Source: Selaginella moellendorffii (taxonomy: Eukaryota; Plantae; Lycopodiophyta). From it: 64,000 bases of DNA. The DNA is taken from NCBI RefSeq assembly GCF_000143415.4, contig NW_003314301.1, positions 4,930 to 68,929 on the forward strand, given 5' to 3'. Of the stretch, positions 1,807 to 64,000 are shown in pieces; positions within the stretch are counted from its first letter, which is position 1, and the number at the start of each line of letters is the position of its first letter. The translations under genes and the position numbers were made by a program. The notes below the pieces were generated by a model. The model searched no databases and was not told where the DNA came from. It saw only the letters and a list, made by a program, of their open reading frames with translations.

Positions 1807-2697
1807 TTACTCGCGTGACTCCTCATTTCCCGGATGCACCTTGGTATCCAAACCTTCCACCGCAGCAGCACCAACGGGACGTTGCTGACGCCAAGGTCTC
1901 CACCCAGGAAATGGAGGTCGCCAATCCGAAAAGCGCCTACAATGCCGATAAGTATGACCAACTTCATCACACGCCCAGCAACGAACATTATGGCCACAAC
2001 CACATCCTCGCCCTTGTCCTTGGACTCGAGTAGCAGCAGCATCAACCTCCATTGGAACAGGACCATCACTCATAGGAAGTGGAGCGGAAGGACGTGCAGC
2101 GAAAAGTGGAAGAGGCGACATCTCATAACGTTGTGCCAAGCGAAGAGCATCGTCAAGGGTGGCAGGAGCAAGTGCATGCACAAGGCCGGCAAGATCTTGA
2201 CGAAGTGCTGGCCACAACATTCCTAGCTTGATCCGCTCCGACATATTTGGCTCCGCACGAAGCAAAAGACTTCGAAAACGAATGCCAAATTGCATCACCG
2301 ACTCAGATGGCCCTTGGCGAAGACGATGCAATTGTTGGAAGGCATCATCACAATCGTCGGCGTGTCCAAAGGCGCGTTTGAAGACGTCCGGAAGAACACT
2401 CCAATCGCCACGAGTGGCTGCGCTCAATCCATTGTACCATTGCAATGCTGTCCCTTGGAGACATGTGGGGAACTCACGCAAATGTCGAGCATCATCCCAA
2501 GAATGATATGTGGCAACCACCGTGAAGTGATCGAACCAATGGTACACATCATCCCCAGGATTCCCACGAAAGAACTCCGGCCGAACACGAGGATTGGCAC
2601 TAAGAGCAGGAGGAGTTGTACCATGTGCCGTGAACGATGCCATCAACTGAGTTTGGTTGTTCAATTGCAAGCGCATAGCATCAAGCAATTGAACCAA
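1807..2697 (-). CDS. gag: Retrotransposon Gag with CCHC zinc knuckle
   Basis: 296-aa ORF with retrotrans_gag-like LQGTALQWY and LRQGPSESV, PVPMEVD, and CWACDEVGHTYRHC. Confidence 0.9.
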   Translation of the reverse strand: MVQLLDAMRLQLNNQTQLMASFTAHGTTPPALSANPRVRPEFFRGNPGDDVYHWFDHFTVVATYHSWDDARHLREFPTCLQGTALQWYNGLSAATRGDWSVLPDVFKRAFGHADDCDDAFQQLHRLRQGPSESVMQFGIRFRSLLLRAEPNMSERIKLGMLWPALRQDLAGLVHALAPATLDDALRLAQRYEMSPLPLFAARPSAPLPMSDGPVPMEVDAAATRVQGQGRGCGCGHNVRCWACDEVGHTYRHCRRFSDWRPPFPGWRPWRQQRPVGAAAVEGLDTKVHPGNEESRE

Positions 2698-4999: not shown

Positions 5000-6448
5000 A
5001 TGATGGAGGAAGAGGGCTACAGGTCGCAAATGACAACGGGCAGCTTGATTCCGCTGCTGCAGAAGGCCCTTTTGCAACACCAAGTAAGAATTGAACCACT
5101 TCCAGTTGCGGCTCCTGTTTTGCAGCTGGACGATCCTGCGCTGAGTTACCTTTCCAAGATGCTTTTAGGCGGGGATAGTGATAGTGACGAGCAGGAGGTT
5201 GCAACCCCGCAGCAGAACAGATACCAGGCTTACATGGACGACCTGAATTCCATCATAAGAGGTTGCGTCCAGTCTCCGGACAGTGATCAAGAACAGGTCG
5301 ACCAGGAAGTATTTAGCTTGCTCAGAGAGTGCGCAAGAGCAGTAGCAGCCAGGAACTCGGCACAGGTTTACAATCTCATCGGATTGATCAAGAACTCAGT
5401 GACATCCGAAAACAGCCACTTAGAAAGGACCGCATTGTTCTTCGTCAACGCACTGGTAGCAAGGCTTAAAGGGTGTGGTTCACAGCTCTACTCGGCTCTG
5501 TCCAGAGAGGTTTCTCAGAAGCGCTACGTGGGGCTTTTGTGCATGAACCTCCCGTGGTTCAGCGCCACCGAGGTGATCTCGAATCACATAATTCTCGAGG
5601 CGTGCAAGGGAGCCAAGCGGATTCATATTGTGGACTACGGGATACTGTATGGCAGTCAGTGGCCGTGGCTTATCCGAGCTTTATCTCAGCAACCCGAGGG
5701 AGCTCCACTGCTGAGGATGACAGGAATCGACTCGTCTGGGATGATAGATGGTGCACAGATTGGGAAGCATTTACTCGAGTTCGCAGAATTGTGTGGGATT
5801 CCGTTTGAGTTTAACTACATCACTGCAGACTCTTGGGAGCTCGCACAGCCGCAGTGCAACAGCTTGAACGAGTTTGTGGTCATCAACACAAACAGGAGAC
5901 TGCGATTCTTGAGGGACGACTCCACCGCAGCAAACAATCCAAGGAAGGTGTTCTTCGATCGCATGCTCAAGCTCCAGCCGGCATTGTTGATCCAGTCTCT
6001 GCAAAGCGCCGACCCCAACGTCTCATCCCCGTTCTTCGTCCAGCGCTTTGAGGCGACACTTGCGTACTATGCCAACATTCTAAACGGTTTTGGAGAGGTT
6101 CTTAAGGATCATCCGCAAGAGCTTGGCTTCGCAAGAAAGTTTGTGGAGAGGAGCATCATGAATGTGGTGGCCTGTGAAGGGGTGGATCGAGTGGAACGGC
6201 CGGGGCCATACTACTACTGGGATTCGACGGCAAAGAAAGCTGGATTCGAGCAGCTGCCTCTGAGCGACCAAGTTATCGAGACAGCCAGGCTGATCTGGAG
6301 AGGCGAGAAGTTTAGCTTGTACAGGGATGGGCACTGGTTGCTACTGGCATGGAAGGACGCCCTGGCGTTTGGGATTTGTGCATGGAAACCTGGCGTGAAG
6401 CCGAGAAATTCGTACAGCGCCAAGAGTTCAAAAAGATACCACTTCTAA
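5000..6448 (+). CDS. GRAS transcription factor, SCL9/SCL14 (LISCL)-like, intronless
   Basis: 482 aa: LHR I (LLRECARAVA), VHIID (IHIVDYGILYGSQWPWLI..LRMTGID), PFYRE (FFVQRF), SAW (NVVACEGVDRVERP..WKD..ICAW); N-terminal LSYLSKMLL typical of LISCL. Confidence 0.93.
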   Translation: MMEEEGYRSQMTTGSLIPLLQKALLQHQVRIEPLPVAAPVLQLDDPALSYLSKMLLGGDSDSDEQEVATPQQNRYQAYMDDLNSIIRGCVQSPDSDQEQVDQEVFSLLRECARAVAARNSAQVYNLIGLIKNSVTSENSHLERTALFFVNALVARLKGCGSQLYSALSREVSQKRYVGLLCMNLPWFSATEVISNHIILEACKGAKRIHIVDYGILYGSQWPWLIRALSQQPEGAPLLRMTGIDSSGMIDGAQIGKHLLEFAELCGIPFEFNYITADSWELAQPQCNSLNEFVVINTNRRLRFLRDDSTAANNPRKVFFDRMLKLQPALLIQSLQSADPNVSSPFFVQRFEATLAYYANILNGFGEVLKDHPQELGFARKFVERSIMNVVACEGVDRVERPGPYYYWDSTAKKAGFEQLPLSDQVIETARLIWRGEKFSLYRDGHWLLLAWKDALAFGICAWKPGVKPRNSYSAKSSKRYHF

Positions 6449-37659: not shown

Positions 37660-38750
37660 ATGGGGAAATGGAGCGCCTTGGGTCGCTGCGGAAATTTCGA
37701 GTGCGTCACGGAGCCATCGCTAGTGCTGCACACCTTGAGCTTCCTGGACGTCCCAGACTTGTTCACATTGCGGGCGGTGTGCAAGTCTTGGCACGATCCT
37801 GTGCTCTCTCCTCGTTTCGTGCAGCTCTACAAGCCACCGCTGGAGCCCTGGGCCGTGTTCAGGGTGCGCACGGGCCGGCCGGTCACGAGTCAAAGGACGC
37901 ATTCGCAGGTGTCGTGGCTGTAGGCAGCGTCGTTACATGTACACTGACGATCGTTTCGACTATGGCATGACACTGGAGAATCACGCCGAGCTATGGCGTC
38001 CACACAGATCCCAGCGCAAGAGGTGCATCCTTCCACTAGGCCCTCCGGGATCGTGTTTCGTGGGCTTGTGCTCGTCCAACGGGCTCGTCTGTGGGATGCT
38101 CGTGGAACACTCGGAATCGACGACTTTGGCTGTGGGGAATCCAATCTGGAAGGCGCTTCCACCAGTTCCATTTCCCTTTAGAAGTCGTCTACATACACCC
38201 AGCCCTTCTCTGCATTGACAGCGAAAGAGATGTCACCAGTCACATTGTCATACTTTACGAACTGCAAGATCGAATTGTCCGCACGCAGCATCTTCTTGGC
38301 ACGAGGGCCCCTTCTTCAGCAGGTCAAGCTCACTGGGATCACCTCTACGGGGCTGACCTTTCTTCTACACCACTAGGCAGGAGATACTCCCAACTTACGA
38401 TCCGCATTCCAGAGCTTGGTCTCACGTGGACAACGCGCGACCAGCACTATGTAACCAGCTTCTTCAACACATTCGTCCCTTCATCTACAAGGGAAAATGC
38501 TGCTGGGTAATGAACATGTTTGATCTAGAGCAACAATTGTTGAAAGCAATGCAGCAGCAATCTGGGAGATGAACTCAACATCGGTGTTGGTGTAGGGAGC
38601 TGCGTGGACCTAATTCTTTTACGGATTGGGCAGTGAGACTTGTAGAGGACACCGTCTTCATCTCGGCCTTCTCTGTTGCATACGACTTTGCTCTCTCATG
38701 GAGGGTGAGGATATTGAGTGCAGATATGTGGTGCGCTTGTCTGCCCAGCC
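37660..38750 (+). pseudogene. F-box protein pseudogene
   Basis: LHTLSFLDVPDLFTLRAVCKSW; CSSNGLVCG..LAVGNP; frameshifts. Confidence 0.75.
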
Positions 38751-39362
38751 TTAAACAAAATATTCAGTCAAACTCATGAATCACTAGAATTTGAGTTATT
38801 CTCAGCAATTGTTATTAGTTTTAAATCTTCTCTCCTCCGATGTTTCCAATGTTTCTATGACTTTCCAGGTATCCAGTAGCTCAAAGTCATGTTCTTTTGA
38901 GTCACTAAAATGACTAATCCGTCGGTCCTGCGGATTCAAAATTTGGGATTGGGAACGAAGAAGTCAAACACGGCACTAAAAGAGACAACCACGCTGTAAC
39001 TGAGGACACGGCACTGAAAAGAGACAACCGTACGAAAGAAGAAAGCCTACTTTGTTGTGAGAATGCTCGCTTTAGTGATTTCAAGGATCCCGCGGCCATA
39101 TTCTCCCATGGGAAAATTGGTCCAAATGGTAATAGTCTTGAATTTCTCTGTCAAAAATCTATTGCTGTTTTTCAGTATCACACTATGCATCCAGGACTAG
39201 GTGAGAACGTTCACTTTGATCATTCCGTTCAAAGTCATGTGGCGATACTCTGAGACCCAGGTTTTTCCAAAGAGCCTTTGAAAGCACTTTCAAGGCTGCA
39301 AAATATATATGATATGGTAAGACTTGAACCATTCATTATTCATTTCTTGCTGTTTCTTTCAA

Positions 39363-41590
39363 ATGGATGCGTGGAAGTTACTTGCTGTTTTCTTACTTTC
39401 TATCAGGCTCGTCGATCATGCAGATGCTGGAGATTTAGAAGTTGAAGCACTCTTGAACTTTAGGAAATCTGTACATGATCCTCTACTGTCGCTGAGTAGC
39501 TGGAACAGAGGAACAGATGTTTGCCAATGGAATGGTATCAATTGTTCCTCAGCACTGCCAGGCCAGATTTCTAGCATACAGCTCAACGATCTCTCACTTT
39601 CAGGACCTCTTCCGATTTTTACAATCCAAGCCCTACCTCAGCTACGCAACTTTTCTGTTTCAGGGAACAACCTCACAGAAATCAACATATCCTCTTCGCA
39701 GGAATGCTCTCTGGAGGTTCTTGACTTGTCAAGGAACCATTTCACTGGGGATTTTCTCGACACTCTTACTCTTTCATGCAAAGGCATGAGGATTTTGAAC
39801 TTCTCATACAACAAGCTACAACACATTTCAGTGAAAAGGTCAATTGGGAATTCAATGGTTTCCGTCGATCTATCCTAATACCTTCTTCTTTCTTCACATC
39901 ATGCAAGAGCTTGCAGTTTCTAGACGTTTCGAGCAATCAGCTGGTTGGAGAGATCCCTGAAGATATGTTCAAAAACTGCAAAAGTCTACGACAGCTTAAC
40001 GTTTCATCCAACTTCTTCACAACATTTCGGATTGAGCATTGTACTAGTCTGCAGGAGTTGGACGTCTCGTTTAACAACATTTCTGAAACAGTTTTTTGGA
40101 ACGATTGTGATGCTTTGAAGGTGCTCAACCTGTCAGATAATCACTTCTCTGGACCATTTCTCTCGGTATTTGCCAATCGAAGTTTACCTCAGGTTTTCAA
40201 GTCCCTGAAGGTTCTTCGAGCCGACCACAACAGTTTCACGGGTGAACTCCCTACAGTTCCTCAAACCCTCGAGGCTCTAGACTTGAGCTGCAACATGTTC
40301 ATCAGTAGCAACACAAACATCTGCCTCCTAAACTCCAGACTCGAGTCTTTGGTGTTGGTATACAACAGATTGCATGGTCCGGTTTTGAGCTTTCACTGTG
40401 ATAACCTACAAATGCTCGATCTGAGTCTCAACTCCATGACAGGATCACTTCCAGAGGATATATGCAGCAGACTTCCAAAGCTTCAACACCTCATCCTTTG
40501 GGGCAACAATCTCGAAGGCAGGATACCACCTACAATCGGCGACTGCAGTGAGTTGGTGACCCTGCATCTCAGTCACAACAATCTCTCCGGTGTTATACCA
40601 GAGGAGATATCTCGCTTGAAGAAAATGTACACGCTAGTTCTTAGCAACAACATGCTATCTGGATCAATCCCGGCATCTGTGGTACAGATACCAAGCCTTC
40701 GAGGTCTTCTACTTGGGCACAACAAGCTTGAGGGTGGTCTTCCAGTGGAGCTGAAAAACACCAGCAATCTAATCCAGCTTTCACTGAACGACAACCAGAT
40801 GGCGGGAGAAATTCCAAGCTGGGTCGGCTGCTCAGTTAAAGAGACGCGGTATAATAATGATGTAACATTCCCCTACTTGATGGTGTTGCTGTTCAACATA
40901 GAGCCATCCATCTGCAAAGGCTACAACGAGGCCATGTTCATACTCCAGGGGATACGTTTCCATGAGTTTGAGCAACTTCCCATTGCAACCAGATGCCAAA
41001 CTTGGTTCTACCTAGCACCTCCAGGTTTCAACATTTATTTAACTCCAAATCATACTAGCCACTGGTGCATCGATATCTCATTCAACAGCTTCACAGGAAC
41101 AATCCCAACAGAATTCTGTGCGACTCAGAATTTGTATTGGCTGAACCTTGCACACAACTTGCTCACAGGGGCTATTCCTTCCACAATGGGCAACCTCAAG
41201 AACATTGAGTGGCTAGATCTCTCACAAAACCAGCTCGAATCACAGATCCCGGGCTCGCTTGCCGACCTCACCTTTTTGAAGTACTTCAACATCTCACACA
41301 ACAGGCTTCTTGGAGGGATTCCACAGGCAGGGCAGCTTCCAGTTTTCCCAGCAAGCAGCTACGAAGGAAATCCGGGGCTGTGTGGCATCCCACTTGCAGA
41401 ATGTCAACGTGCTGCTCCTGATGACCATAATTTGGATAATCATTCTGGTGGGAAGGATGAAGATGGAAGGATGCTGGCTGGCATTGTTGCTGCTGTTGTT
41501 TCATGTGTTTTATGGAGCTGTGCAGTATTCTTCAGCAAGAGTTGGGAAAGATTACTTCAACGGGTCTTGATGTCTTGGTTATATTATTGA
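39363..41590 (+). pseudogene. LRR receptor-like protein (signal peptide, LRRNT, LRRs, island domain, 4 LRRs, TM, short tail; no kinase), frameshifted near 39875
   Basis: EALLNFRK..SWN..CQWNGINC cap; LxxLxLSxNxLxGxIP repeats; YEGNPGLCG cap; TM LAGIVAAVVSCVLWSCAVFF; split over ORFs 39363-39878 and 39776-41590. Confidence 0.85.
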
Positions 41591-41989
41591 GTTAAATTCA
41601 AACTGCAGTCAATAAAAGTGAAGATAATGTAGTCTATAAAAGTGAATACAATCTTTCAAGATTTCTAGCATACATACTTGCATTAGCAATGGTCATATGA
41701 GTGGTTTAGCAATGAAGAGCTTGTTGCTGATTTGCATTAGTCCCTACTTTTTCATGTCATGTGTTCATGACTTTGTTTCTGTATTATATGTAAGGATATA
41801 GATATGCATTAGTTGCATTTTCACTGTTGACACATCCAAAATATAACACAATCTCCGAGGTTCCAGAAAATCTAACTTGTCCAGGCTCAATTTCTTTAGC
41901 AATTAACACATATGTCAAAACTTGATTTTTATACTTACCCATCTTTATCTACTGTTCTCTTCTTAGGTTGCTTTAGTGCTAATAGTTAA

Positions 41990-44900
41990 GATGAAATATA
42001 GTATATAGTGTCTTTGCATGAACTACAAAAGATTGAATGATAAGATACTGAAAAATATGTTCTCAATCCCTCATATCAATGATTTGGTGTATTGTGGTGC
42101 TTGCTACTTTTCAAGGATTGATTTAAGATTAATGATATCATCAAATTAATATTAAGCTAGAAAGACAGTATTTCAAACAAGGACAAGTCACTATAAATTA
42201 TTGGTGATGCCATTTGGTTTGACAAATATGCTTGCAACTTTTCAAAGGTTTAATGAATTAAGTTTTGCAACCTTACTTGGGGAATTTTGTGATTGATTAT
42301 TTTGATTGTAGCGCACCTTATCTTTCTCCCCTTAAACCAACTGAAAAAGGGGCAATTGCTTGATGAGAGAGCCTTTAGTGACTATTTTATCTCTATTTAT
42401 CCCCCAAAGTTCCAAGGATCCACGGTGACAGTATATCTAAATCTCATCCCATGATCACATGCACTACACTCATCCCCCCTTTAGAGATGTCAATGTCTTC
42501 ATTGACTATTGACTAACAATCTTTACTGAGCCAAGGGGAACCAACACCTCCATTTCCGCATTGAATTTACTAATCCTTCCATTGTATAGATTAACTATTC
42601 CATGTGAAGCAATTAATCATCACCCGTATTGCAGTCCCATGGTGGATATTTTTGTCCGTGGATACTCCACACAAAAGGAAGGACGTACGCATGGATGCCC
42701 AATATGTACGATTTCAAATTTAGAGGTAGGAATATACCTTGCTCAAGGGTATATTATATTTTTTAAATAACCACTAATCAATGGGAATCAAACCCGTGCC
42801 ATTTGCTTCGATACCATATGTAACGCACTTTATTTCTCTACTGGAAAAAGGGCAATTGCTTGATGAGAAAACTCTTAATAGCTATTTTATCCCCATTTAT
42901 CCCCCAAGGTTTCAAAGATCTACGGTGACAATATATCTAAATCTTATTCCATGATCATATGCGTTATATTGATGATATCTTGGTATTTAGTGTTACCTTA
43001 GAAAAGCATGAAATGCATGTGAAACAAAGTGTTGGAATTCTTGAAAGACAACAAGAAATTGAATATCTTAAGCATTTGATTTTAGTGCATGGATTGAGAG
43101 TTGATCTAGCAAAGATCAAGGTTGTGGTTAAGTAGTATATATCACCTACTCCCTTAGCTGATCTTCTCCAAAACACATTGAAGCATACTATTATATATAA
43201 TTGGGATGCAAAATGTCAAATGGCATTTATACAGTGGAAATAGTATTGTGTTTCTGCTTCAGTGTGGGCATCTTCTTGACACAACAAAATTAGCTGACTT
43301 GTGACAAGGAGTTATATGATATAGTTAATGCTATGAAGAAATGATGACATTATTTATATGGATTGGAGTTCTATATAGATTCAGACTATTAGTCTCTCCA
43401 ATATTTTATTTATCAAACAAATCTTCAAGGCCACTTTGCATGTTGGTAAGAGTTCTTGTAGGAAATGTTAGTTAAGATCCAATATCGATGAGGGGTGACA
43501 ATAAGGTGGTTGATGCATTACCTAGGATAGTGAATTATATCTCGTTTGTGAAATTATATAGTGATCTTTTGGATGAGCTTAAGGAGTTTGTTGACTTCAA
43601 ATCCTTTATCATTAATATGCACATGAAGATTTGAAGAGGGATGCTTCTATTGTTGTGAAGGGGGACAATTTTATGTCATTTGAGATACAAGATGGAATCT
43701 TGGTGAAGAAGGGTTATATAGTGGTTCCTTATGTTGATAAGCTCATCAAAAGGATTTTGGTGGAGTGTCATGATATGCCAAATGTTGGGCATCCAAAGGT
43801 ATTAAGGGTGCATATGTTGGTAAAAACACATTTGTTTTGGCTTGGGATGAAGTTAGATGTAGAAAAGTATATATACAATTGTTTGACCTACTAGGTAATT
43901 AAATCTGATCATTAGAAGCTCATTGACCTTTACCATCCTCTACGTATACTTGAGCATAAGTGGGATAGCATCTCGATGAACTTTATCACTAATTTGCCCA
44001 AAACCTTTCAAGAAAATGATATTATTTGGGTTGATATGAATTGTTTGATGAAGATTGGCTCACTTTTTCCCCATGAAGACAAGTCTTAAAGCTTTTGATC
44101 TTCCTTAGTTATTTGTAAACTAATTATTTAGTCTGTATGGTTTGCTAGGTGATATTATAAGTGATTGGGATCTCAAATTCATGTCAAAGTTTTAGCAAAT
44201 AGTATTTGAAAAATTAGAGACTAAGTTGAACATGAGTAGAGGTGAGCATCCACAATTTGATAGATAAACAAAGGGCATAAATCAATTGTTGGAAGATATG
44301 CTATGATCATTTATGGGAAACTTGATTAAGCAAGATGTATGGGAGAAGTATTTACCTTTGCTTCAATTTGCTCACAATAGACTAAATAATTGGCTATTGA
44401 CATATCTTTATTTATGGTGATATATAGCTGCAAGCCAAGGTCTCTTGTGGGTTTGAGTTTAGCTTTAGTTCAAGTGCTTTTTGCTTGTGATTTCCTAGAG
44501 GATATACAAGACAAACTTAAGTTGGCAAAGTTGAATATAAGGCAAACTCAAGATCGAGACAAGAGATTAACTGATAAGCATTATCATCATTAGGAATAAA
44601 AAGTTGGTGATAAGGTTTTCCTTAAGTTGTCTAATATGCTCAGGTCTCTCAAAGGAGGTAGTAATATTAAGTTGTCTTTGTAGTATTATAGGCTTTGTGC
44701 AATTTTGCAATGTGTGGGAGATCTTCCTTACATTTTAGACTTGCTAGCTAGCTCTAAAATTCATTCGAAGTTCCATGTGAGCAAGTTAAAAACATGTTTA
44801 TACTTTAGCAATATCTTGGATTAGCTCATCATCCAGGTTCTAGAGATTGATGCTGAGAAAAGCTAGTCTAGCATATATTCTTGTTCAAAGGTTGGTGAAA

Positions 44901-45859: not shown

Positions 45860-46340
45860 AGTATGTTCAGCGATACTGATTGAGAGTACATCACCATCAA
45901 CAATTTACAGCAATTATGCCAAGGCTCTAAGTCTACATCCACCTATGCTTCTGAGTTCTAGATGGTTGCCACTGACATCTTGTGGGATGATGCAACTCTC
46001 AAAGAACACTTTCGGCTTGGTTTGTGTGATGATATGAAAGATTTGATGCTTTCTCATCCAGATCCTACATCTCTCATGATGGGCATCAATCTTGCTGTTT
46101 GGTGTGATAATTGACTTCAAGAATGTCGGCTGGAACGACATCCAAATTTTGTTTCATGTGCAGCACCCCTGGTTTTTGAGAACCCCGTACATGAGCTAGG
46201 TGCAGTTCCAATGGAGATTGGAGCTACCCGACGGTGACGTCTTTCTCATGCTAAGAGACAACATTGGATTGAGAACCACTTATGTATGTATTATGGAGAT
46301 GTAGATCACATCCGGCAACAGTGTCCTCATCTTCCATCAA
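45860..46340 (+). mobile_element. Gypsy gag fragment from a different family
   Basis: STYASEF, WDDATLKEHF, GAVPMEIG and a degenerate zinc knuckle. Confidence 0.7.
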
Positions 46341-46364
46341 GATCACAAGCACAAAGACCCCAGG

Positions 46365-46980
46365 ATTTTCTCCGTTCTCTACACTAGCATCTCCCTCTAA
46401 CATTATAACTGAGTCTGTGTTTAGGAAGTTCTTCCCATCCAACTTTGAGTCCTTTCTAAACATACATTGATTTCATTGCGCAACAAAATACTATCCCACG
46501 TTTGGAAGCTCAGGGAGTTTTGATGTTCAAAAGAGGGAACTGGCTGCCTACTTTGCAAATGTGAAGCAGGAAACTGGAAGTAAATTCACATAGCATTTAT
46601 CCATTAATCTCATACTACGGAAGAGGACATTTGCAGCTCACCTGGTAAGTTGGAAATGTTATATTCAAAATTTAAAGAGTATATATATACAGGAATTACA
46701 ATTACGATGCTTCTGGAAAGGCTTTCAACATGAACCTCCTCCAAAATCTAGACCAGGTTGCTCAGAATGGCGTCCTTTAGTGGAGGTCATCAATGTGGTT
46801 TTGGATGCAAAATTCGAATTGCCACACCGCAATAACATAGAACCAAGGATTTGGAGCTACAATTCGAGCCATCAATGGAGGTCAGGATTGTGGCAAGGGC
46901 AGTGAGACACATGCACAGAACCATATCAATTATTACAAGGACTTTGCTCACAGTTGGGTGTTTCATCAGGCTGTGCTTAA
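46365..46980 (+). pseudogene. GH19 chitinase pseudogene
   Basis: Homologous to 60830-61580; most of exon 2 deleted; stops; no start. Confidence 0.88.
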
Positions 46981-47253
46981 ACAAATGTTTTTAAAAGTTA
47001 TTATTAATCAACTAATTAGTAATTAATTATAAGTTATGATGATGCTTTTCAACCTAAAGCTTCAAGTTTCCCTGCTAGAACATGAAGGACAAGAAGACTT
47101 AGCGAGAGAGGGGGATAGAGCATGTATACCAAGGTGTGGCAATAAAGAGACTTATTTGGAGATCATCTTTGAGTTTTAAGACAACAATCATATCATTTCT
47201 GCAGCTCTAGAAACGATCAGCGACATCAAGTGCTCACTCAACAGTTGATTATC

Positions 47254-47965
47254 ATGGAGTTCTTGTCAATTGCGGCAGTTCTAGTGATTGCTGAGTTATT
47301 TGCTCCAGGCTTGGGTTTCCAGTGTCCAAAAGCCATGTTCTGGTTTGGGGATTCTATTGTCGATACAGAGAATGTTCAAGCAGCAGCTCCGTTTATTAGT
47401 GCCGCAGAGTATAAGCCTTATGGCATGACTTTCTTCAGTAAGCCATCAAAGAGATACTCAGATGGTCGTGTGGTTGTCGACTTTTTTGGTAATTGTGTGT
47501 GTTGATTAAACAGCATTTGATGTTATTTGTGAATGTTTTTGCAGCGGAGGCTTTTGAGTATGATAGATTCCTGGATAACATTTTGCAAAGTATTAACTTG
47601 AATTATGCCAATGGGGTGAATTTTGCGGTCTCTGGAGCAACTGCTTTGAACACCAGCCTCGAAGTTCCACTGTACCTTCCAGTTCAGATTGACCAGTTTC
47701 TGAGGTTCAAGCAAGATGCTTACTACAGCAGACATGGTAAAGGTAATGATTCTTCTCAGACTTTGCAAAGGTAGTGTCATTCATGGATTCTTCTGTAGGG
47801 ATGTAAAAGCTAGTTCCTTATTATCATCATCTAAAGACTGCTCTGTATGTGGTTGTCATAAGTATTAATGACCTCAATTCCTACTTGTTGGAGCAAAGAA
47901 GCCCTGAGAATGTAACAGTTGAGGTTGTTCCATATGTTGTGAGAGCCATACCAACCTGATGCATA
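47254..47965 (+). pseudogene. GDSL esterase/lipase, truncated duplicate
   Basis: FWFGDSIVDT, PYGMTFF..RYSDGR, GVNFAVSGA; third exon disrupted, 3' end missing. Confidence 0.8.
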
Positions 47966-57066: not shown

Positions 57067-60000
57067 CTAGGATCGATCATTCATCGTCTTGGAGACCTTG
57101 CAAAGTTCCACTGGAACATTAGCGTCCGAGAGAATCAGAAACCAGGCCACCTGTTGCTCGGACAAGCGATCCCCTGGACCCTTGACTTCGGCCAGCCTCG
57201 CCTCTTTCTCCTTCCACAGCAGAAGATCAGGCATTCCAGCCGTCCAGTTACTGTGGTCTTCTGCAAGAAGCTTGCAAATCACCGACAATCCTGGACCTCC
57301 GATACAGACCGTTATTGTTTGAAGGTCTTCAAGCGAGTACTTCTCCCAGTTTACCCCGCTACATGATGTCCCGTAGTGCTCTGCCCAAGTCTCAGCCACG
57401 AGTTGCCTAGCTCCGCCATCGCGTATGGCTTGAAGACGAGATTCAATAAGCGAGCTTCGGACTGGATAGAATGAATCCGTGCACAAGTCCAATGGTGCAG
57501 TCTGCAAACAAGAACTGTAGAGCAACCACGAGAAAATGAAACAAGAACCTGAAAAGGTGTCTGGAAGACATCTGGAACGTCTGAAAAGATAACATCCCAC
57601 ATGAGCAGCCCGAACAATGTCAGCCATATGCCACTTTCTGAATGGACTCCTTTCCAGCCGCCTCCATCTTCTCCGGCATAGTATTGAAGTGCCAGGTCCT
57701 CCACACTGCATTGTTGCCCATCGTAGCCATAAAATCTGCTCTTCATTCCATTGGCATTGTTTAGCGGCCTTCCCATAATCGTCACCTTCAGAAACAGAGT
57801 TGTAGCTGAAGGCCAAATATCTGGAAGACACAGTACGTACCACCTTTTGTTTTTTCTTTAAAAGCGCTGCATATGGAGGTACTTTCCACCTTCTAGGAGG
57901 TTTTCCTAGTCGGAGAACCCTCCGTTGCAAAGCAATACGATCCCCTCCTCGGACGCTGAAATCATTTAATCCGTTTTCTGCAACGAGCAGGCTCTCTTCT
58001 AAACGCTGTAAGTGCTCCAAGTCAATAGATAGCCGGAGAGTCCAGTATCCTCTCCGTCCAGGACAATACTGCATGCTAAGGAGCTGCTTGAAGAGGTTTA
58101 TAGCTTCAGCATATCTGGTCAAGAGCCAGTTTTAGTTCAAAAGTATTGTTCGCCATTGGTGAAAGAGCGTACCTGCGTTCTTTCTCCAGAAACGATGCAG
58201 CCACAGTACAGATTGTTGCATACACCCATGCAGCCGAAAATCGTGCTAAAAATGGATGCTTGATCTCGGTGTGTGCATTGATCAATTCGAGAGTAGTCCT
58301 TGCTTTTCGAAAAGAGGAGTTTACAGCCTCAGAATTACCAGCTTCCAGAGACATGTCAACCACCTGAGCCAATTGCAATGCCTGAAAACTCGACGGTCAG
58401 ACAAATTTTATAACAAAGTAGGAACGGACCTGCTCATACGCCAGAAAGTCCTCTCGAGAAGCAAAGACTGGCATTGTTCTAGCGCACCTATAGCTTGGAT
58501 ACTTGATCCTTCCAATATCCACAAGAAGAAAAACATGGAACTCCTGCTCACCGTTTAGAAAGAACAGCCTCTGAATAAATAAATAAATAAATAAATAAAT
58601 TGCTCAGCACCAGCAGTGTAACACTTTGGAGAGGATGTCAACTGACCTGTAAACGCCAAAGTAGAACTTCAAGTGTTTCGGCTATTCGAATGCATGGGCC
58701 GGTTGCTTCACGAATTAAAGCCGTTAGATTACTGCCGCCAAGTATTTCACGCTTGTATAAAAAACCAATGATCACTTGCTACTTACAAATGCAGCGAAAT
58801 TAATGCATCTCGAATTGCTGTAATAAGCTGAATCTTTTTCAAACTTAGCGTAGCACTTTTGATCTGTAAGCAGGAACAGAAATGAAAACAAGGAAGAAAG
58901 TCTTAGAAGTAACTACCATGATTTTGCTGTTCACTGCCAAATCTTTGAGCTCTTGTACAGTCAGATGTTCAAGCAACTCCGACGAATTGACGTCCGCGTT
59001 GAAAACTAAGTAGCGTCTCTCTGTTACAAGGGAGCAAACATATTATGAAGTACACGATGAAAGAAATTGAGTACCGACTAACTCATGGACTGCAGAATTT
59101 GTGTCACCAATATCTTCATAGAAAATGTTCTGAAGACGGAACCATGGCCCTGCAAAACCACAGTCTCCCTTGAGTCACAGTTTGTGCGACGGTGTTTAGC
59201 TTACCCTTTCGTTGAGCCAATCTTACAAAAAGGCGCTGTCCATCAGACGAGATTGAACGAAATGCCTCGAGAAGTTCGATCTCGTCTGGAGTAAAGAGAT
59301 GGAGATCCCGTTCCAATACCACTTGGAGCATGTAGAGAAAATTCTGTTGGTATCGACAGCCGTGGTCTTGTCCCTTGTCAGCTGCATCCATCAGACGGCT
59401 CCATTTGACAGCCAGCACTTTTTCTTCTGAGAGACTTCCAATAGTCCGACTCTGGATCTCACGCAAATCAAGCTTGAGGCGTGCAGCTTCCGATGTACTC
59501 TCGGAGACATATCCCTGAAAGCTTTGTGAACAATTGAAAAACGCCCCAGAGATTAGTTACCTGAACGTCTACCACGCCTTTGTCCATGAGAGGAGACAAA
59601 TAACGCGAAAGCTCTTTTGGAATATGTCCCAGCGAAAGCCCATCCGCCGTAAGCACCTGGCGCAATGTTGTTGTCAGCCATGAAACACGTCCATTCAGTC
59701 AAGCTTACCTTCACAGCGTATGTATCCATGGGATTTTCTGGTTCCCTTACCAGGTGAACTCGCATCCCAGCTTGGCACTCGACGTCTCTGTGGTACTTGC
59801 GGCCAGCAATCCTTGCCTCCAGGCAGCCATTGTAAAGATCTCTAGTTTCACTGTTGAGCTCTGCCGGAAGGACGCTGTTGGCCACGTCGGGCTCCTCAAA
59901 GCATTCAAGAGTAGAAGAAACTTCCGGTTCCGGAGACCCTGCCGCCGTGTTACAGTCGACCCCAGTCTCGAGCGGAGGAGACTGCTGGATTTCTAGTACG

Positions 60001-60419
60001 CAGTTTCCGCTTTCCTCATACTCTACCTTTTTCGACAAGTTGAAGTGAAAGAGTGTATGCTGGACACTGTTCTTCTTTTTCTTCCCACGTTGCAGGCAAG
60101 TATCTGGACAAGAGACACCATCGATCAGCGTGCTTGAATCAAAACAGAGCAAAATCCAAACCAAGATGGCAGTTGACGAGAAGTTCATTCCCGCGTATTT
60201 GCTTCCCACACACAGGGCATTCCACCCAGTCACAACAAGCTAAGCTCAGGCCTCCTTTTATTTCCAGCGAAACATCACCGCACTCCAACTCTTCCTGCAG
60301 GAAAACGATCACAGATCCACCCAAGAAATAGAAGCTCGATCACTCACCCGAGCCGGGAGTGACACATTGCGCTGCCGCTTCCCAACAAGCCGAATCAAGC
60401 TCTCACGGCCCCGGAGCAT
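57067..60419 (-). CDS. FAN1: Fanconi-associated nuclease 1 homologue (multi-exon)
   Basis: Start MLRGRESLIRLVGKR; UBZ CPVCG..NCHLD; HIRAN IAGRKY..LVREPENPMDTYAVKV; RRGYWTLRL; VRR-NUC GMPDLLLW..EVKGPGDRLSEQQ; short GT-AG introns. Confidence 0.93.
58575..58600. repeat. (AAAT)n microsatellite at a FAN1 intron acceptor
   Basis: Directly visible. Confidence 0.9.
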
Positions 60420-62419: not shown

Positions 62420-63032
62420 ATGGCATTAGTCATGATAATGTTTACGCTATGCCTCCTCCCTCTAACATTGTAACTGAGTCTGTGTTTAGGACCTTGCGAA
62501 TCCTTTCTAAACATTCAATGATTTCATTGCGGCAACAAAATACTATCCCACGTTTGGAAGCTCGGGGAGTCTTGATGTTCAAAAGAGGGAACTGGCTGCC
62601 TACTTTGCAAATGTGAAGCAGGAAACTGGAAGTAAAATTGCATAGCATTTATCCATTAATCTCATACTACGGAAGAGGGCCTTTGCAGCTCACCTGGTAA
62701 GTTGGAAATGTTATATTTAAAATTTAAAGAGTATATATATACATGAATTACAATTACGATGCTTCTGGAAAGGCTTTCAACATGAACCTCCTCCAAAATC
62801 TAGACCAGGTTGCTCAGAATGGCGTCCTTTTGTGGAGGTCATCAGTGTGGTTTTGGATGCAAAATTCAAATTGCCACACCGCAATAAACAGAACCAAGGA
62901 TTTGGAGCTGCAATTCGAACCACCAATGGAGGTCAGGAGTGTGGCAAGGGCAGTGAGACACACGCACAGAACCGTATCAATTATTACAAGGATTTTTGCT
63001 CACAGTTGGGTCTTTCACCAGGTTGTGCTTAA
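62420..63032 (+). pseudogene. GH19 chitinase tandem pseudogene
   Basis: Deletions in exon 1, loss of most of exon 2, mutated acceptor site. Confidence 0.88.
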
Positions 63033-63468
63033 ACAAATGTCTAATTAGTAATTAATTATAAGTTATAATTCAAGTTTCCCTGCCAGAACATGAAGGACAA
63101 GAAGACTTGGCGAGAGAGGGGGATAGAGCATGTATACCAAAGTGTGGCAATAAAGAGACTTATTTGGAGATGGCTTCGGACGACACTTGGCGGTACGACA
63201 GCGCATTGGATCAATTCGGGAAGGCGCCCCTCCCAGAACTAGTATTGTGTGTCCCATGTGCGGTCAACCGTGGCTGCGATTGTTAGAGGTTCTAGAAGTA
63301 GAGAGCAGTGTCGAGTCCACGCTCGTTGTCTTTCCGTCCTGGTTCTCCATGACAGTTTAATGCTAGGTTCATCTTCGAGTTTTAAGACAACGATCACATC
63401 GTTTCTGCAGCTCCAGAAAAGATCAGCGACATCAAGTCGACATTCTGCTCGCTCAACAATTGATTATC

Positions 63469-64000
63469 ATGGAGCTTTTGTCAATTGCGGCAGTTCTAGT
63501 GATTGCTGAGTTATTTGCTCCAGGCTTGGGTTTCCAGTGTCCAAAAGCCATGTTCTGGTTCGGGGATTCAGGGAATGTTCAAGCAAGAGCTCCGTTTATT
63601 AGTGCTGCAGAGTATAAGCCTTATGGCATGACTTTCTTCAGTAAGCCATCGAAGAGATACTCGGATGGTCGCTTGGTTGTCGACTTCTTTGGTAATTGTG
63701 TGCGTTGATTAAACAGCGTTTGATGTTATTCGTGTATGTTTTGCAGCGGAGGCTTTTGAGTATGATAGATTCCTGGATCCCATTTTGCAAAGTATTAACT
63801 CGAATTATGCCAACGGGGTGAATTTTGCGGTTTCTGGAGCGACTGCCTTGAACACCAGCTTCGAAGTCCCACTGTACCTTCCGGTTCAGATTGACCAGTT
63901 TCTGAGGTTCAAGCAGGATGCTTACGACAGCGGACATGGTAAAGGTAATGATTCTTCTCAGACTTTGCAAAGGTAGTGTCATTCATAGTTTCCTCTGTAG
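63469..64000 (+). CDS. GDSL esterase/lipase (5' exons; continues beyond the window)
   Basis: FWFGDS, PYGMTFFSKPSKRYSDGRLVVDF, GVNFAVSGATA; 12-bp deletion after the catalytic Ser relative to the 47254 copy. Confidence 0.8.

What the first reader, a model, noticed from the sequence alone, without database searches (positions are those of the whole stretch)
40820..41410. Kinase-less LRR-RLP with a BRI1/BRL-like island domain
Seen: a non-LRR island (..NIEPSICKGYNEAMFILQGIRFHEFEQLPIATRC..YLTPNHTSHWCIDISFN) is followed by four LRRs, GQLPVFPASSYEGNPGLCGIPL, a TM helix and a tail of only ~15 aa. Knowledge, recalled from memory: BRL1/BRL3 islands read CxG...FxGIRxExLxxLPxxxxC...NGSMI.DISYN and form the brassinosteroid pocket; canonical BRI1-type receptors are best known from seed plants. 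Inference: this probable lycophyte gene may belong to an RLP family carrying a BRL-type island, relevant to the origin of steroid receptors or to co-receptor-dependent small-molecule sensing.
Basis: partly seen in the sequence, partly recalled or inferred. Interest (0 to 1): 0.8.

Follow-up and report, generated by a model that had tools for sequence, protein, structure and literature searches.

The report
Kinase-less BRI1-like receptor, broken allele
This Selaginella gene encodes a cell-surface protein whose outer part descends from the plant steroid-receptor (BRI1/BRL) family, but it has no kinase and lacks the steroid-contact residues, and the copy in this window is a frameshifted allele.

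Summary
Window 40820-41410 (+) reads exactly as quoted: an 80-residue non-LRR island, four LRRs, the GNPGLCG cap, then an acidic stretch, one TM helix and an 18-residue tail.

The organism is Selaginella moellendorffii. The gene is intronless. The other haplotype (L001) carries an intact 748-aa ORF. This window's allele has a 19-nt deletion after 39876, which gives a stop at 39876-39878.

The BRI1/BRL-like reading holds:
- Among solved structures, only BRI1-family chains align into the island.
- An island-only profile comparison gives 94% probability against BRL islands and 0.1% against canonical RLP islands.
- Seven Selaginella kinase-less proteins form a clade with BRI1/BRL (100/99 support; 100/96 without the island columns).

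Three results limit the claim:
- Pfam's island model is not matched.
- The predicted island fold has low confidence.
- The steroid-contact residues are replaced (W564Q, Y597M, Y599L, Y642L, G644P).

No kinase lies in the 64-kb window or beside five related loci. The family shows purifying selection (dN/dS about 0.3), and transcript-like contigs cover the gene. The C-terminal module is RLP-like.

RLP counterparts of BRI1/BRL are already published for other plants. This scan reached the same reading on other DNA of this genome. I rate it a new variant of a known kind, of moderate interest.

The parts
39363..39431 (+). Start codon and predicted signal peptide (MDAWKLLAVFLLSIRLVDHADAG)
   Evidence: ORF reading. 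The same N-terminus MD(A/P)W(K/R)LLA.. is kept in paralogs P0006 and P0008 and in L004. The signal-peptide call rests on composition and conservation; no predictor was run.
39316..39406 (+). Alternative 90-nt GT..AG joint that removes the signal-peptide codons. Unspliced contigs are also present.
   Evidence: read laying, table 5 (X1 joint 39315->39406, depth 41) and table 8 (colinear contigs in X1 and X6). NCBI model P0002 starts MIW|LVDHADAG.
39438..39548 (+). LRRNT_2 cap
   Evidence: Pfam PF08263, E 4.3e-12
39549..40828 (+). About 18 LRRs before the island, spread over two reading frames in this allele
   Evidence: Pfam LRR_1, LRR_8 and LRR_4; LRR motif count on the intact allele
39876..39878 (+). 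Break: 19 nt (ACAACGAAATGAGTGGTTC) are missing after 39876. This creates a TAA stop and a frame change, leaving a 171-aa truncated product.
   Evidence: P0001 and L001 have VSVDLSYNEMSGSMPSSFF at this point. Contigs of runs X1 and X6 carry the 19 nt; a contig of X8 lacks them (tables 4 and 8).
40829..41068 (+). Island domain, 80 aa, with two conserved Cys and the QGIR motif
   Evidence: Alignment A1; hhalign against BRL islands 94.2%, E 1.2e-7; PDB alignments enter it only for BRI1, BRL1, BRL2 and BRL3
41069..41410 (+). Four C-terminal LRRs (the C3 region) and the cap GNPGLCGIPLAECQ
   Evidence: aligns to the C3 region of BRI1/BRL, PSKR1 and RXEG1
41411..41470 (+). Acidic extracellular juxtamembrane stretch (net charge -4)
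   Evidence: BRL kinases score 0 to +3 here; canonical RLPs score -3 to -6.
41471..41533 (+). Transmembrane helix with a GxxxA (small-xxx-small) motif
   Evidence: Hydropathy window and motif scan
41534..41590 (+). 18-aa cytoplasmic tail SKSWERLLQRVLMSWLYY and stop codon
   Evidence: The FF(S/N)K(S/R)WE..L(Q/K)R motif is kept in paralogs at L002 and L004. A transcript-like contig of X6 runs colinear through the stop (41452-41629).

Best explanation
The locus is one haplotype's copy of an intronless Selaginella moellendorffii gene for a kinase-less LRR receptor-like protein. In its intact allele the protein has 748 aa: signal peptide, LRRNT, about 22 LRRs with an 80-aa island before the last four, an acidic juxtamembrane stretch, one TM helix and an 18-aa tail.

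Shown:
- The ectodomain, island included, is homologous to the BRI1/BRL ectodomain. With six other Selaginella kinase-less proteins it forms a clade next to the angiosperm BRI1/BRL sequences sampled here.
- No kinase is encoded at this locus or beside the related loci.
- The C-terminal module resembles that of canonical LRR-RLPs.
- The family evolves under purifying selection, and transcript-like contigs cover the gene.
- The copy in this window carries a 19-nt frameshift deletion in an N-terminal LRR, so it is most likely a null allele.

Inferred:
- The intact protein sits in the plasma membrane.
- It binds an unknown extracellular ligand in the groove between the island and the inner LRR face.
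- It signals, or damps signalling, through partner kinases. A SERK co-receptor would dock on the last four LRRs. A SOBIR1-like adaptor might be held by the acidic juxtamembrane and TM segment.
- Because the steroid-contact residues of BRI1 are replaced, it is probably not a classical brassinosteroid sensor.
For: Organism and family:
- The best hits are NCBI S. moellendorffii proteins named 'BRI1-like 3', 'BRL1' and 'BRI1'. None has a kinase Pfam domain.

Homology to BRI1/BRL:
- One HMMER alignment of 201 bits runs from LRRs through the island to the cap in BRL2. BRL1, BRL3 and BRI1 behave likewise. PSKR1 and RXEG1 align only after the island.
- The best full-coverage hits outside Selaginella are BRL1, BRL3 and BRI1 kinases, at 36-42% identity and 99-100% coverage.
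- Island-only hhalign gives 94.2%, E 1.2e-7 against BRL islands and 0.1% against Cf-9/EIX2-type islands.
- In the tree, the Selaginella RLPs plus BRI1/BRL are supported at 100/99, and at 100/96 with the island columns removed. Canonical RLPs form a separate clade.
- The model superposes on BRL3 at TM 0.83 and 2.1 A. PSKR1 gives 0.57-0.59 and RXEG1 0.67-0.69.

No kinase:
-. Clade C and D genes are single exons ending in a stop, with unrelated neighbours.

Intact allele and deletion:
-. The reads show both alleles.

Constraint:
- dN/dS is 0.29-0.34 overall, 0.15-0.34 in the island and 0.29-0.43 in the TM plus tail.

Transcription:
- Transcript-like contigs cover about 39040-41629 but not the flanks that the DNA run covers. 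One carries a GT..AG joint.

RLP-like C-terminus:
- The juxtamembrane charge is -4 (paralogs 0 to -9) against 0 to +3 in BRL kinases. The TM has a GxxxA motif; clade C has GxxxG. PMC10834447 ties these features to SOBIR1 binding.

Pocket residues replaced:
-, read against PMC13481262 and PMC9570414.
Against: - Pfam PF20141 (island) gives no hit even at E 10. An island-only HMM finds nothing in the PDB and only weak hits to BRL islands. Island homology therefore rests on profile-profile comparison, position, length, the Cys pair and the flanking LRRs.
- The AF2 island has pLDDT 42-61, and its alignment contained BRLs, so the fold match is not independent.
- No PSKR, PSY1R, EMS1, NILR1, fern or bryophyte BRL was in the tree.
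- The runs called RNA are only guessed to be RNA, and they are contigs, not reads.
- The window allele lacks the T/S of the QxxT/S SERK loop (it reads QLPV), and its TM has no strict GxxxG.
- No partner or ligand has been tested.
Confidence: 0.75

Rival explanations
1. It is a working steroid or small-molecule sensor. The BRL-type island pocket binds a brassinosteroid or a related sterol, and the signal passes through SERK/SOBIR1-type kinases. This would explain how Selaginella responds to brassinosteroids without a BRI1 kinase.
For: - The ectodomain is of BRI1/BRL type with an island of the right size and place.
- Selaginella is reported to make and respond to BRs yet to lack BRI1 (PMC3862569, PMC9223546).
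- The BR pocket is structurally plastic, and BRL2, which has Met at position 597, still binds BRs (PMC13481262).
- Clade B keeps Phe at the position-599 equivalent.
Against: - The W564 equivalent is Q, H, M, L, V or T in all seven Selaginella proteins, while it is W in all 13 BRI1/BRLs. W564H alone gives a strong loss of function in BRI1 (PMC13481262).
- Y599, Y642 and G644 equivalents are L, L and P in this gene.
- Every replacement of Y597 or Y599 other than Phe impaired signalling to differing degrees (PMC9570414).
Confidence: 0.1
2. It is a decoy or dampener. A membrane-anchored ectodomain without signalling output would sequester a ligand or a SERK co-receptor.
For: - There is no kinase, and the tail is only 18 aa.
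- The C3 region that binds SERKs in BRI1, PSKR1 and RXEG1 is the best conserved part (dN/dS 0.22-0.28).
- PMC10834447 notes that the functions of such RLP counterparts are unknown.
Against: - The acidic juxtamembrane stretch and small-xxx-small TM motifs are those that canonical RLPs use to recruit an adaptor kinase (PMC10834447).
- The tail motif is conserved among paralogs, which suggests it does something.
Confidence: 0.15
3. The genes are decaying remnants of a lost BRL receptor kinase family and have no present function.
For: - The window allele is frameshifted.
- Paralog L004 has a stop and a frameshift near its 5' end.
- L003 holds a fragmented extra copy.
- Ligand-contact residues are not kept.
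Against: - Intact single-exon ORFs exist at L001, L002, L005 and L006.
- dN/dS is about 0.3 across the island, C3 region and tail.
- The two alleles differ by 12 synonymous and 6 non-synonymous codons.
- Transcript-like contigs cover the gene.
- No kinase remnant lies downstream.
Confidence: 0.07
4. It is an ordinary immune-type LRR-RLP, and the island's likeness to BRI1/BRL is convergent or comes from shared deep ancestry of all ID+4LRR receptors.
For: - The architecture is that of an RLP, with an acidic juxtamembrane stretch.
- All ID+4LRR receptors are thought to share an origin (PMC10834447).
- Pfam's island model is not matched.
Against: - Canonical RLPs form a separate, well supported clade (99/96), and the grouping with BRI1/BRL survives removal of the island columns.
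- The island profile has no similarity to Cf-9/EIX2-type islands.
- The Yx8KG and Kx5Y motifs of RLP islands are absent by direct reading of the island.
Confidence: 0.05

Closest known systems
BRI1/BRL receptor kinases (LRR-RLK subgroup Xb: AtBRI1, BRL1, BRL3, BRL2)
   Same: - LRR ectodomain with an island of about 75-80 aa before the last four LRRs.
- The Cys pair, the GIR motif, S662 and the Q of the last-LRR loop are conserved.
- 33-40% identity across the last ~360 ectodomain residues.
- About 22 LRRs, as in BRL2 (21).
- The gene is intronless.
- Best sequence and fold matches.
   Different: - No juxtamembrane-kinase-tail module.
- The extracellular juxtamembrane stretch is acidic rather than basic.
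- Steroid contacts are replaced: W564, Y597, Y599, Y642, G644, M657 and F658 equivalents are Q, M, L, L, P, W and C.
- Pfam PF20141 is not matched.
Kinase-less 'LRR-RLP counterparts of BRI1/BRL' reported by Ngou et al. 2024 (PMC10834447). Possible examples from these searches, not named in that paper: Macadamia P0012, Ilex P0044 and Durio P0184.
   Same: RLP architecture with an ectodomain that falls in the BRI1/BRL clade. Function unknown.
   Different: - Those in the paper are highly similar to BRL1/BRL3, keep the BR-binding residues, and occur in species that also have BRI1/BRL kinases. The examples found here match PF20141.
- The Selaginella family branches outside the sampled angiosperm BRI1/BRL.
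- It has lost or never had the pocket residues.
- It occurs in a species reported to have no BRI1/BRL kinase (PMC3862569, PMC9223546).
Canonical ID+4LRR LRR-RLPs (Cf-9, RLP23, EIX2, RXEG1)
   Same: - No kinase, and a short tail.
- An island followed by four LRRs.
- Acidic juxtamembrane stretch and small-xxx-small or GxxxG TM motifs.
- Probable dependence on SERK and SOBIR1-type partners.
   Different: - The island is unrelated in sequence (hhalign 0.1%) and lacks the Yx8KG and Kx5Y motifs.
- These RLPs form a separate clade in the tree.
- RXEG1 superposes worse (TM 0.67-0.69).
PSKR1 (and AtRLP3/PSY1R as an RLK-RLP pair)
   Same: Subgroup Xb, with the ID+4LRR layout. The existence of RLP twins of a receptor kinase (PMC10834447).
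   Different: The PSKR1 island does not align; alignments start after it. The fold match is poorer (TM 0.57-0.59).

Membership tests
BRI1/BRL family (ectodomain) | LRR ectodomain groups with BRI1/BRL rather than with other LRR receptors | tested here: met
   Clade of the Selaginella RLPs plus BRI1/BRL is supported at 100/99, and at 100/96 without the island columns. PSKR, EMS1, PSY1R, NILR1 and non-seed BRLs were not in the tree.
BRI1/BRL family (ectodomain) | About 70-aa island between the fifth- and fourth-last LRR, with the Cys pair and the F.GIR core | tested here: met
   Alignment A1 has invariant C, G, I and C columns and a similar island length. hhalign of islands alone gives 94.2%, E 1.2e-7. 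Only BRI1-family PDB chains align into the island.
BRI1/BRL family (ectodomain) | Match to Pfam PF20141 (brassinosteroid receptor island domain) | tested here: not met
   No hit at E<=10 for the window island, P0006, P0029 or P0118. Control P0012 scores 96 bits.
BRI1/BRL family (ectodomain) | BRI1-type island fold | tested here: inconclusive
   The model superposes on BRL3 at TM 0.83 and 2.1 A over 339 columns. However, island pLDDT is 42-61 and BRLs were in the input alignment.
BRI1/BRL receptor kinases (whole protein) | Cytoplasmic Ser/Thr kinase domain | tested here: not met
   The ORF stops 18 aa after the TM helix. There is no Pkinase Pfam hit, no kinase motif or tblastn hit in 64 kb, and none beside L001-L006.
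Brassinosteroid receptors (function) | Pocket residues W564, Y/F597, Y/F599, Y642 and G644 | tested here: not met
   The equivalents are Q, M, L, L and P in this gene. W564 is not kept in any of the seven Selaginella proteins but is invariant in 13 BRI1/BRLs. Residue roles are taken from PMC13481262 and PMC9570414.
Brassinosteroid receptors (function) | Binds brassinosteroids | not testable with these tools
   Needs purified ectodomain and binding assays.
LRR-RLPs of the ID+4LRR class | Signal peptide, LRRs, island plus four LRRs, TM helix, short tail, no kinase | tested here: met
LRR-RLPs of the ID+4LRR class | Negatively charged extracellular juxtamembrane stretch and GxxxG in the TM helix (SOBIR1 interface) | tested here: inconclusive
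   Charge is -4 (paralogs 0 to -9): met. The TM helix has GxxxA and no strict GxxxG. Clade C (P0118) has GxxxG.
LRR-RLPs of the ID+4LRR class | RLP-type island (Yx8KG or Kx5Y motifs; similarity to Cf-9, EIX2 or RXEG1 islands) | tested here: not met
   hhalign gives 0.1%. The motifs are absent on reading the island. Canonical RLPs form a separate clade.
LRR-RLPs / Xb receptors (SERK docking) | QxxT/S loop in the last LRR | tested here: inconclusive
   Q is conserved in all. This gene reads QLPV, with no T/S. Paralogs P0003, P0118 and P0029 have QxxT; clade B has QLAL.

The most novel reading that the evidence does not exclude
Selaginella moellendorffii responds to brassinosteroids but is reported to have no BRI1/BRL kinase. 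It may perceive a steroid or another small lipophilic ligand through this family of kinase-less BRL-type ectodomains working with SERK and SOBIR1-type kinases. That would be a split version of the steroid receptor, with a remodelled pocket. It could be either an early stage of BRI1/BRL evolution or a replacement that arose after kinase loss.
Probability: 0.08. Interest if true: 0.85.

Novelty: new variant of a known kind. Interest (0 to 1): 0.5.

Why it matters
Several papers state that S. moellendorffii has no BRI1/BRL homologue and no island domain (PMC3862569, PMC9223546), and that island domains are confined to seed plants (PMC4926431, citing Wang and Mao 2014). In fact this genome carries a small, constrained family with BRL-type ectodomains and islands, though without kinases. 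[quoted passage not shown] It also provides a natural case of a hormone-receptor ectodomain mounted on an RLP-type membrane module, the kind of modular swap proposed by PMC10834447. The family offers concrete candidates for asking how Selaginella senses brassinosteroids, although the replaced pocket residues make a direct role unlikely. For annotation, both NCBI models of this gene are chimeras with neighbouring genes, and the name 'receptor-like protein kinase BRI1-like 3' is misleading.

Tried and rejected
1. A 50-nt GT..AG intron (39858-39907) that would rejoin the two frames was my first idea. I rejected it because the other haplotype and the read contigs show a 19-nt indel in a normal LRR. 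NCBI's 83-nt intron in P0002 appears to be a frame-preserving workaround for the same frameshift.

2. I asked whether a kinase exon lies beyond the downstream retroelement. None is found in 64 kb. Paralogs at other loci end in the same short tail with different neighbours.

3. I asked whether the NCBI models P0001 and P0002, which run on into GDSL-lipase exons at 45.9-47.8 kb, are real. I treat them as chimeras: the GDSL part has its own Met and signal peptide, and a transcript-like contig runs colinear through the RLP stop. One contig does end at 41506, near a modelled donor, so a minor read-through splice cannot be excluded.

4. The exhaustive profile search, using LRR21 + island + LRR22, was swamped by giant multi-LRR proteins whose many repeats add up. 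It gave nothing on taxonomic spread, and it was the session's one job of that kind.

5. The third word search, with the clade-D island, found only one more Selaginella copy.

6. The island-only HMM found nothing in the PDB. The Pfam island model gave no hit.

7. The joint 39839-39916 in run X8 (78 nt, low depth) leads to a stop in either allele, so I do not interpret it.
Full report
**What is there**

The stretch lies in an ORF of 604 codons (39776..41590). That ORF holds LRRs, then an 80-residue segment that is not LRR (40829-41068), then four LRRs and the plant cap motif GNPGLCG. After the cap come a 20-residue acidic stretch, a hydrophobic helix, 18 more residues and a stop.

A second ORF upstream (39324..39878) is in another frame. 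It carries a Met at 39363, a hydrophobic N-terminus, an LRRNT_2 cap and further LRRs. Pfam sees only LRR families. A motif scan of all six frames and tblastn with three BRL or RLK kinase domains find no kinase anywhere in the 64 kb.

**Organism, allele and gene model**

The closest proteins are NCBI models from Selaginella moellendorffii at 99% and 96% identity.
- P0002 is the model of this very window. tblastn places its exons at 39402-39860 and 39899-41527, and then at 45962-47771, where it runs into a GDSL-lipase fragment.
- P0001 is the model of the other haplotype.

P0001 reads VSVDLSYNEMSGSMPSSFF across the point where the window changes frame. The other haplotype's DNA (L001, scaffold GL377650.1) matches the window gene at 98.35% with a single 19-nt gap. 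It carries an uninterrupted single-exon ORF of 748 codons.

The missing letters are ACAACGAAATGAGTGGTTC, after window position 39876. Contigs of two public runs (X1, X6) carry the same 19 letters at that place, and a contig of a third run (X8) lacks them. The deletion is therefore a real allele and not an assembly slip. It creates a TAA at 39876-39878 and a 171-residue product. Outside the deletion the two alleles differ in 18 codons, 12 of them synonymous.

My first idea of a 50-nt intron, and NCBI's 83-nt intron, are both unnecessary. Both NCBI models are chimeras with neighbouring genes. P0001 starts in the upstream F-box gene region, and both models end in GDSL exons that have their own Met and signal peptide.

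**Transcription**

Only contigs were available, and the label RNA on runs X1, X6 and X8 is a guess. Those runs cover about 39040-41629 and not the flanks, whereas the DNA run X2 covers the flanks as well. One run shows a 90-nt GT..AG joint (39316-39405). An X6 contig runs colinear through the stop codon to 41629.

This fits a transcript that ends soon after the short tail. The 90-nt joint would remove the signal-peptide codons. Unspliced contigs are present too, and the signal peptide is conserved in paralogs, so the unspliced form is the one that makes a secreted ectodomain. An X1 contig ends at 41506, close to a donor used in model P0001. A minor read-through splice cannot be excluded.

**Is the island of BRI1/BRL type?**

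For:
- phmmer against all solved structures gives one continuous alignment of 201 bits, from LRRs through the island to the cap, with BRL2. BRL1, BRL3 and BRI1 behave likewise. PSKR1 and the RLP RXEG1 align only after the island.
- With only the island plus four LRRs as query, the BRI1-family chains are again the only ones whose best stretch starts inside the island.
- In a word search scored on this region, the best full-coverage hits outside Selaginella are BRL1, BRL3 and BRI1 kinases at 36-42% identity. EIX2- and RLP7-type proteins either match only the four-LRR half or reach full coverage only at lower identity (30-35%).
- The alignment of 20 sequences needs almost no gaps in the island. 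It has invariant columns at both Cys, at G and I of the GIR motif, and at the D, S and N of the next LRR.
- A profile-profile comparison of islands alone, with no LRR flanks, gives 94.2% probability and E 1.2e-7 over 41 columns spanning both Cys. The same Selaginella profile against Cf-9/EIX2-type islands gives 0.1%.

Against:
- Pfam's island model PF20141 gives nothing even at E 10, while an angiosperm control scores 96 bits.
- An island-only HMM finds nothing in the PDB and only weak, though correctly placed, hits to BRL islands.
- The AlphaFold model is confident for the LRRs (pLDDT above 85) but not for the island (42-61).
- The model superposes best on BRL3 (TM 0.83, 2.1 A), BRI1 (0.81) and BRL1 (0.78). 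PSKR1 gives 0.57-0.59 and RXEG1 0.67-0.69. The input alignment contained BRLs, so this is weak support.

**Phylogeny**

I took the last ~340 ectodomain residues of 39 proteins. The seven Selaginella kinase-less proteins are monophyletic (100/97). They join 13 angiosperm BRI1, BRL1/3 and BRL2 sequences in a clade with 100/99 support. Cf-9, EIX2, RLP12 and related RLPs form their own clade (99/96). With the island columns removed, the joint clade still has 100/96.

Limits: rows without a recognisable cap motif were dropped (HSL1, SKM1, MIK2 and one Diphasiastrum protein). No PSKR, PSY1R, EMS1, NILR1, fern or bryophyte BRL was available to me.

**The family**

S. moellendorffii has at least four clades of such genes:
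- A: this gene and its allele.
- A2: P0003 at L004.
- B: P0005 to P0008 at L002 and L003, which share downstream neighbours and look like haplotypes of one locus.
- C: P0118, a tandem pair at L005.
- D: P0029 and P0378 at L006.

The intact ones are single exons that end in a stop after a TM helix and 6-16 residues. Their neighbours are unrelated or on the other strand. No BRL-type kinase lies near any of them. The only kinase hit is an unrelated 311-residue gene 9 kb away on the other strand of L003.

Some copies are damaged. L004 has a stop and a frameshift near its 5' end, and L003 has a fragmented extra copy.

Between paralogs, dN/dS is 0.29-0.34 overall, 0.15-0.34 in the island, 0.22-0.28 in the four LRRs and 0.29-0.43 in the TM helix plus tail. 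Only the acidic linker is free to vary. The tail motif FF(S/N)K(S/R)WE..L(Q/K)R is shared by three paralogs. The kinase-less form is therefore old and maintained. It was not produced by the retroelement that lies about 0.7 kb downstream in this window.

**Pocket**

I anchored BRI1 numbering on motifs whose residue numbers are given in PMC9570414 and PMC13481262: Y597/Y599, G611, Y642, G643/G644, M657 and S662. The BRI1 numbering between those anchors comes from my memory of the sequence. It agrees with all these anchor numbers, but it remains recalled knowledge.

The scaffold positions are kept: C609, C635, G620, I621, R622, S662 and the Q of the last-LRR loop. The contact positions are not:

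| BRI1 residue | This gene | Note |
|---|---|---|
| W564 | Q | H, M, L, V or T in the paralogs; W in all 13 BRI1/BRLs |
| Y597 | M | |
| Y599 | L | F in clade B |
| Y642 | L | |
| G644 | P | |
| M657 | W | |
| F658 | C | |
| F681 | Y | |

W564H alone gives a strong loss of function in BRI1, and Y599 and Y642 position the ligand (PMC13481262). Every replacement of residue 597 or 599 other than Phe reduced or abolished signalling to differing degrees (PMC9570414). BRL2, which has Met at 597, still binds some BRs, and the pocket is plastic (PMC13481262). Binding of some other lipophilic ligand is therefore not excluded, but classical BR perception is unlikely.

**C-terminal module and mechanism**

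The 20 residues before the TM helix carry net charge -4 (paralogs -8, -9, -2 and 0). The BRL kinases examined carry 0 to +3, and canonical RLPs -3 to -6. The TM helix has GxxxA, and clade C has GxxxG. PMC10834447 links a negative juxtamembrane stretch and GxxxG to SOBIR1 binding, and links the last four LRRs with a QxxT/S loop to SERK binding. It also reports SERKs and SOBIR1 in embryophytes generally.

This gene reads QLPV in that loop, while three paralog clades have QxxT. The most likely working model is a ligand-binding ectodomain that borrows kinase activity from SERK- and SOBIR1-type partners. The alternative is that it titrates them. Both are inference.

**Known or new**

[quoted passage not shown] That paper does not mention Selaginella. 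Papers on BR receptor evolution state that S. moellendorffii has no BRI1/BRL homologue or island (PMC3862569, PMC9223546, PMC4926431). NCBI's automatic names ('BRI1-like 3', 'BRL1', 'BRI1') do flag the likeness.

This scan had already noted the same kind of gene on other pieces of this genome. One follow-up (s1-408288) reached the same reading: an ectodomain of BRI1/BRL descent, no kinase, and the steroid residues missing. My tests here were made independently of that note and agree with it.

**Verdict**

This is a new variant of a known kind, and the window's copy is a null allele.

Noticed in passing
window 37660-38510 (+): An F-box gene lies directly upstream (F-box-like, E 1e-6). NCBI model P0001 wrongly borrows out-of-frame pieces of this region as its N-terminus. 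The paralog locus L004 also has an F-box gene upstream, which suggests a duplicated block.
   Followed up: partly
window 42250-43200 (+): A high-copy repeat starts about 0.7 kb after the stop codon. Depth in the DNA run jumps from about 25 to between 17,000 and 82,000 at 42248-42600. A reverse-transcriptase motif (YIDDILVFS) lies at 42959-43135, so this is probably a retroelement.
   Followed up: partly
window 47206-47771 and 62623-63973 (+): There are two copies of a GDSL esterase/lipase 5' fragment (own Met, signal peptide, FGDSxxDTxN block), 77-91% identical to each other at protein level. NCBI fuses the first copy to the RLP gene.
   Followed up: partly
window 5000-6448 (+): An intact 482-aa GRAS-domain ORF (Pfam E 4.6e-70).
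   Followed up: no
window 57067-58122 (-) and 59553-60233 (-): Exons of a FAN1-like nuclease (VRR_NUC, FAN1 TPR) and a HIRAN-domain piece. The other haplotype (L001) also has a VRR_NUC gene nearby.
   Followed up: no
window 1807-2697 (-): A retrotransposon gag ORF (Retrotrans_gag, E 1.8e-11). The window also contains 634 N.
   Followed up: no
L005 2705-5700 and 8001-10250: The clade C kinase-less BRL-like gene (P0118) is a tandem pair. The island plus four-LRR region is 95.5% identical between the two copies.
   Followed up: partly
window 39839-39916 (+): Run X8 shows a low-depth 78-nt GT..AG joint across the deletion site. It would lead to a stop in either allele. It may be an aberrant splice or an assembly artefact.
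   Followed up: partly
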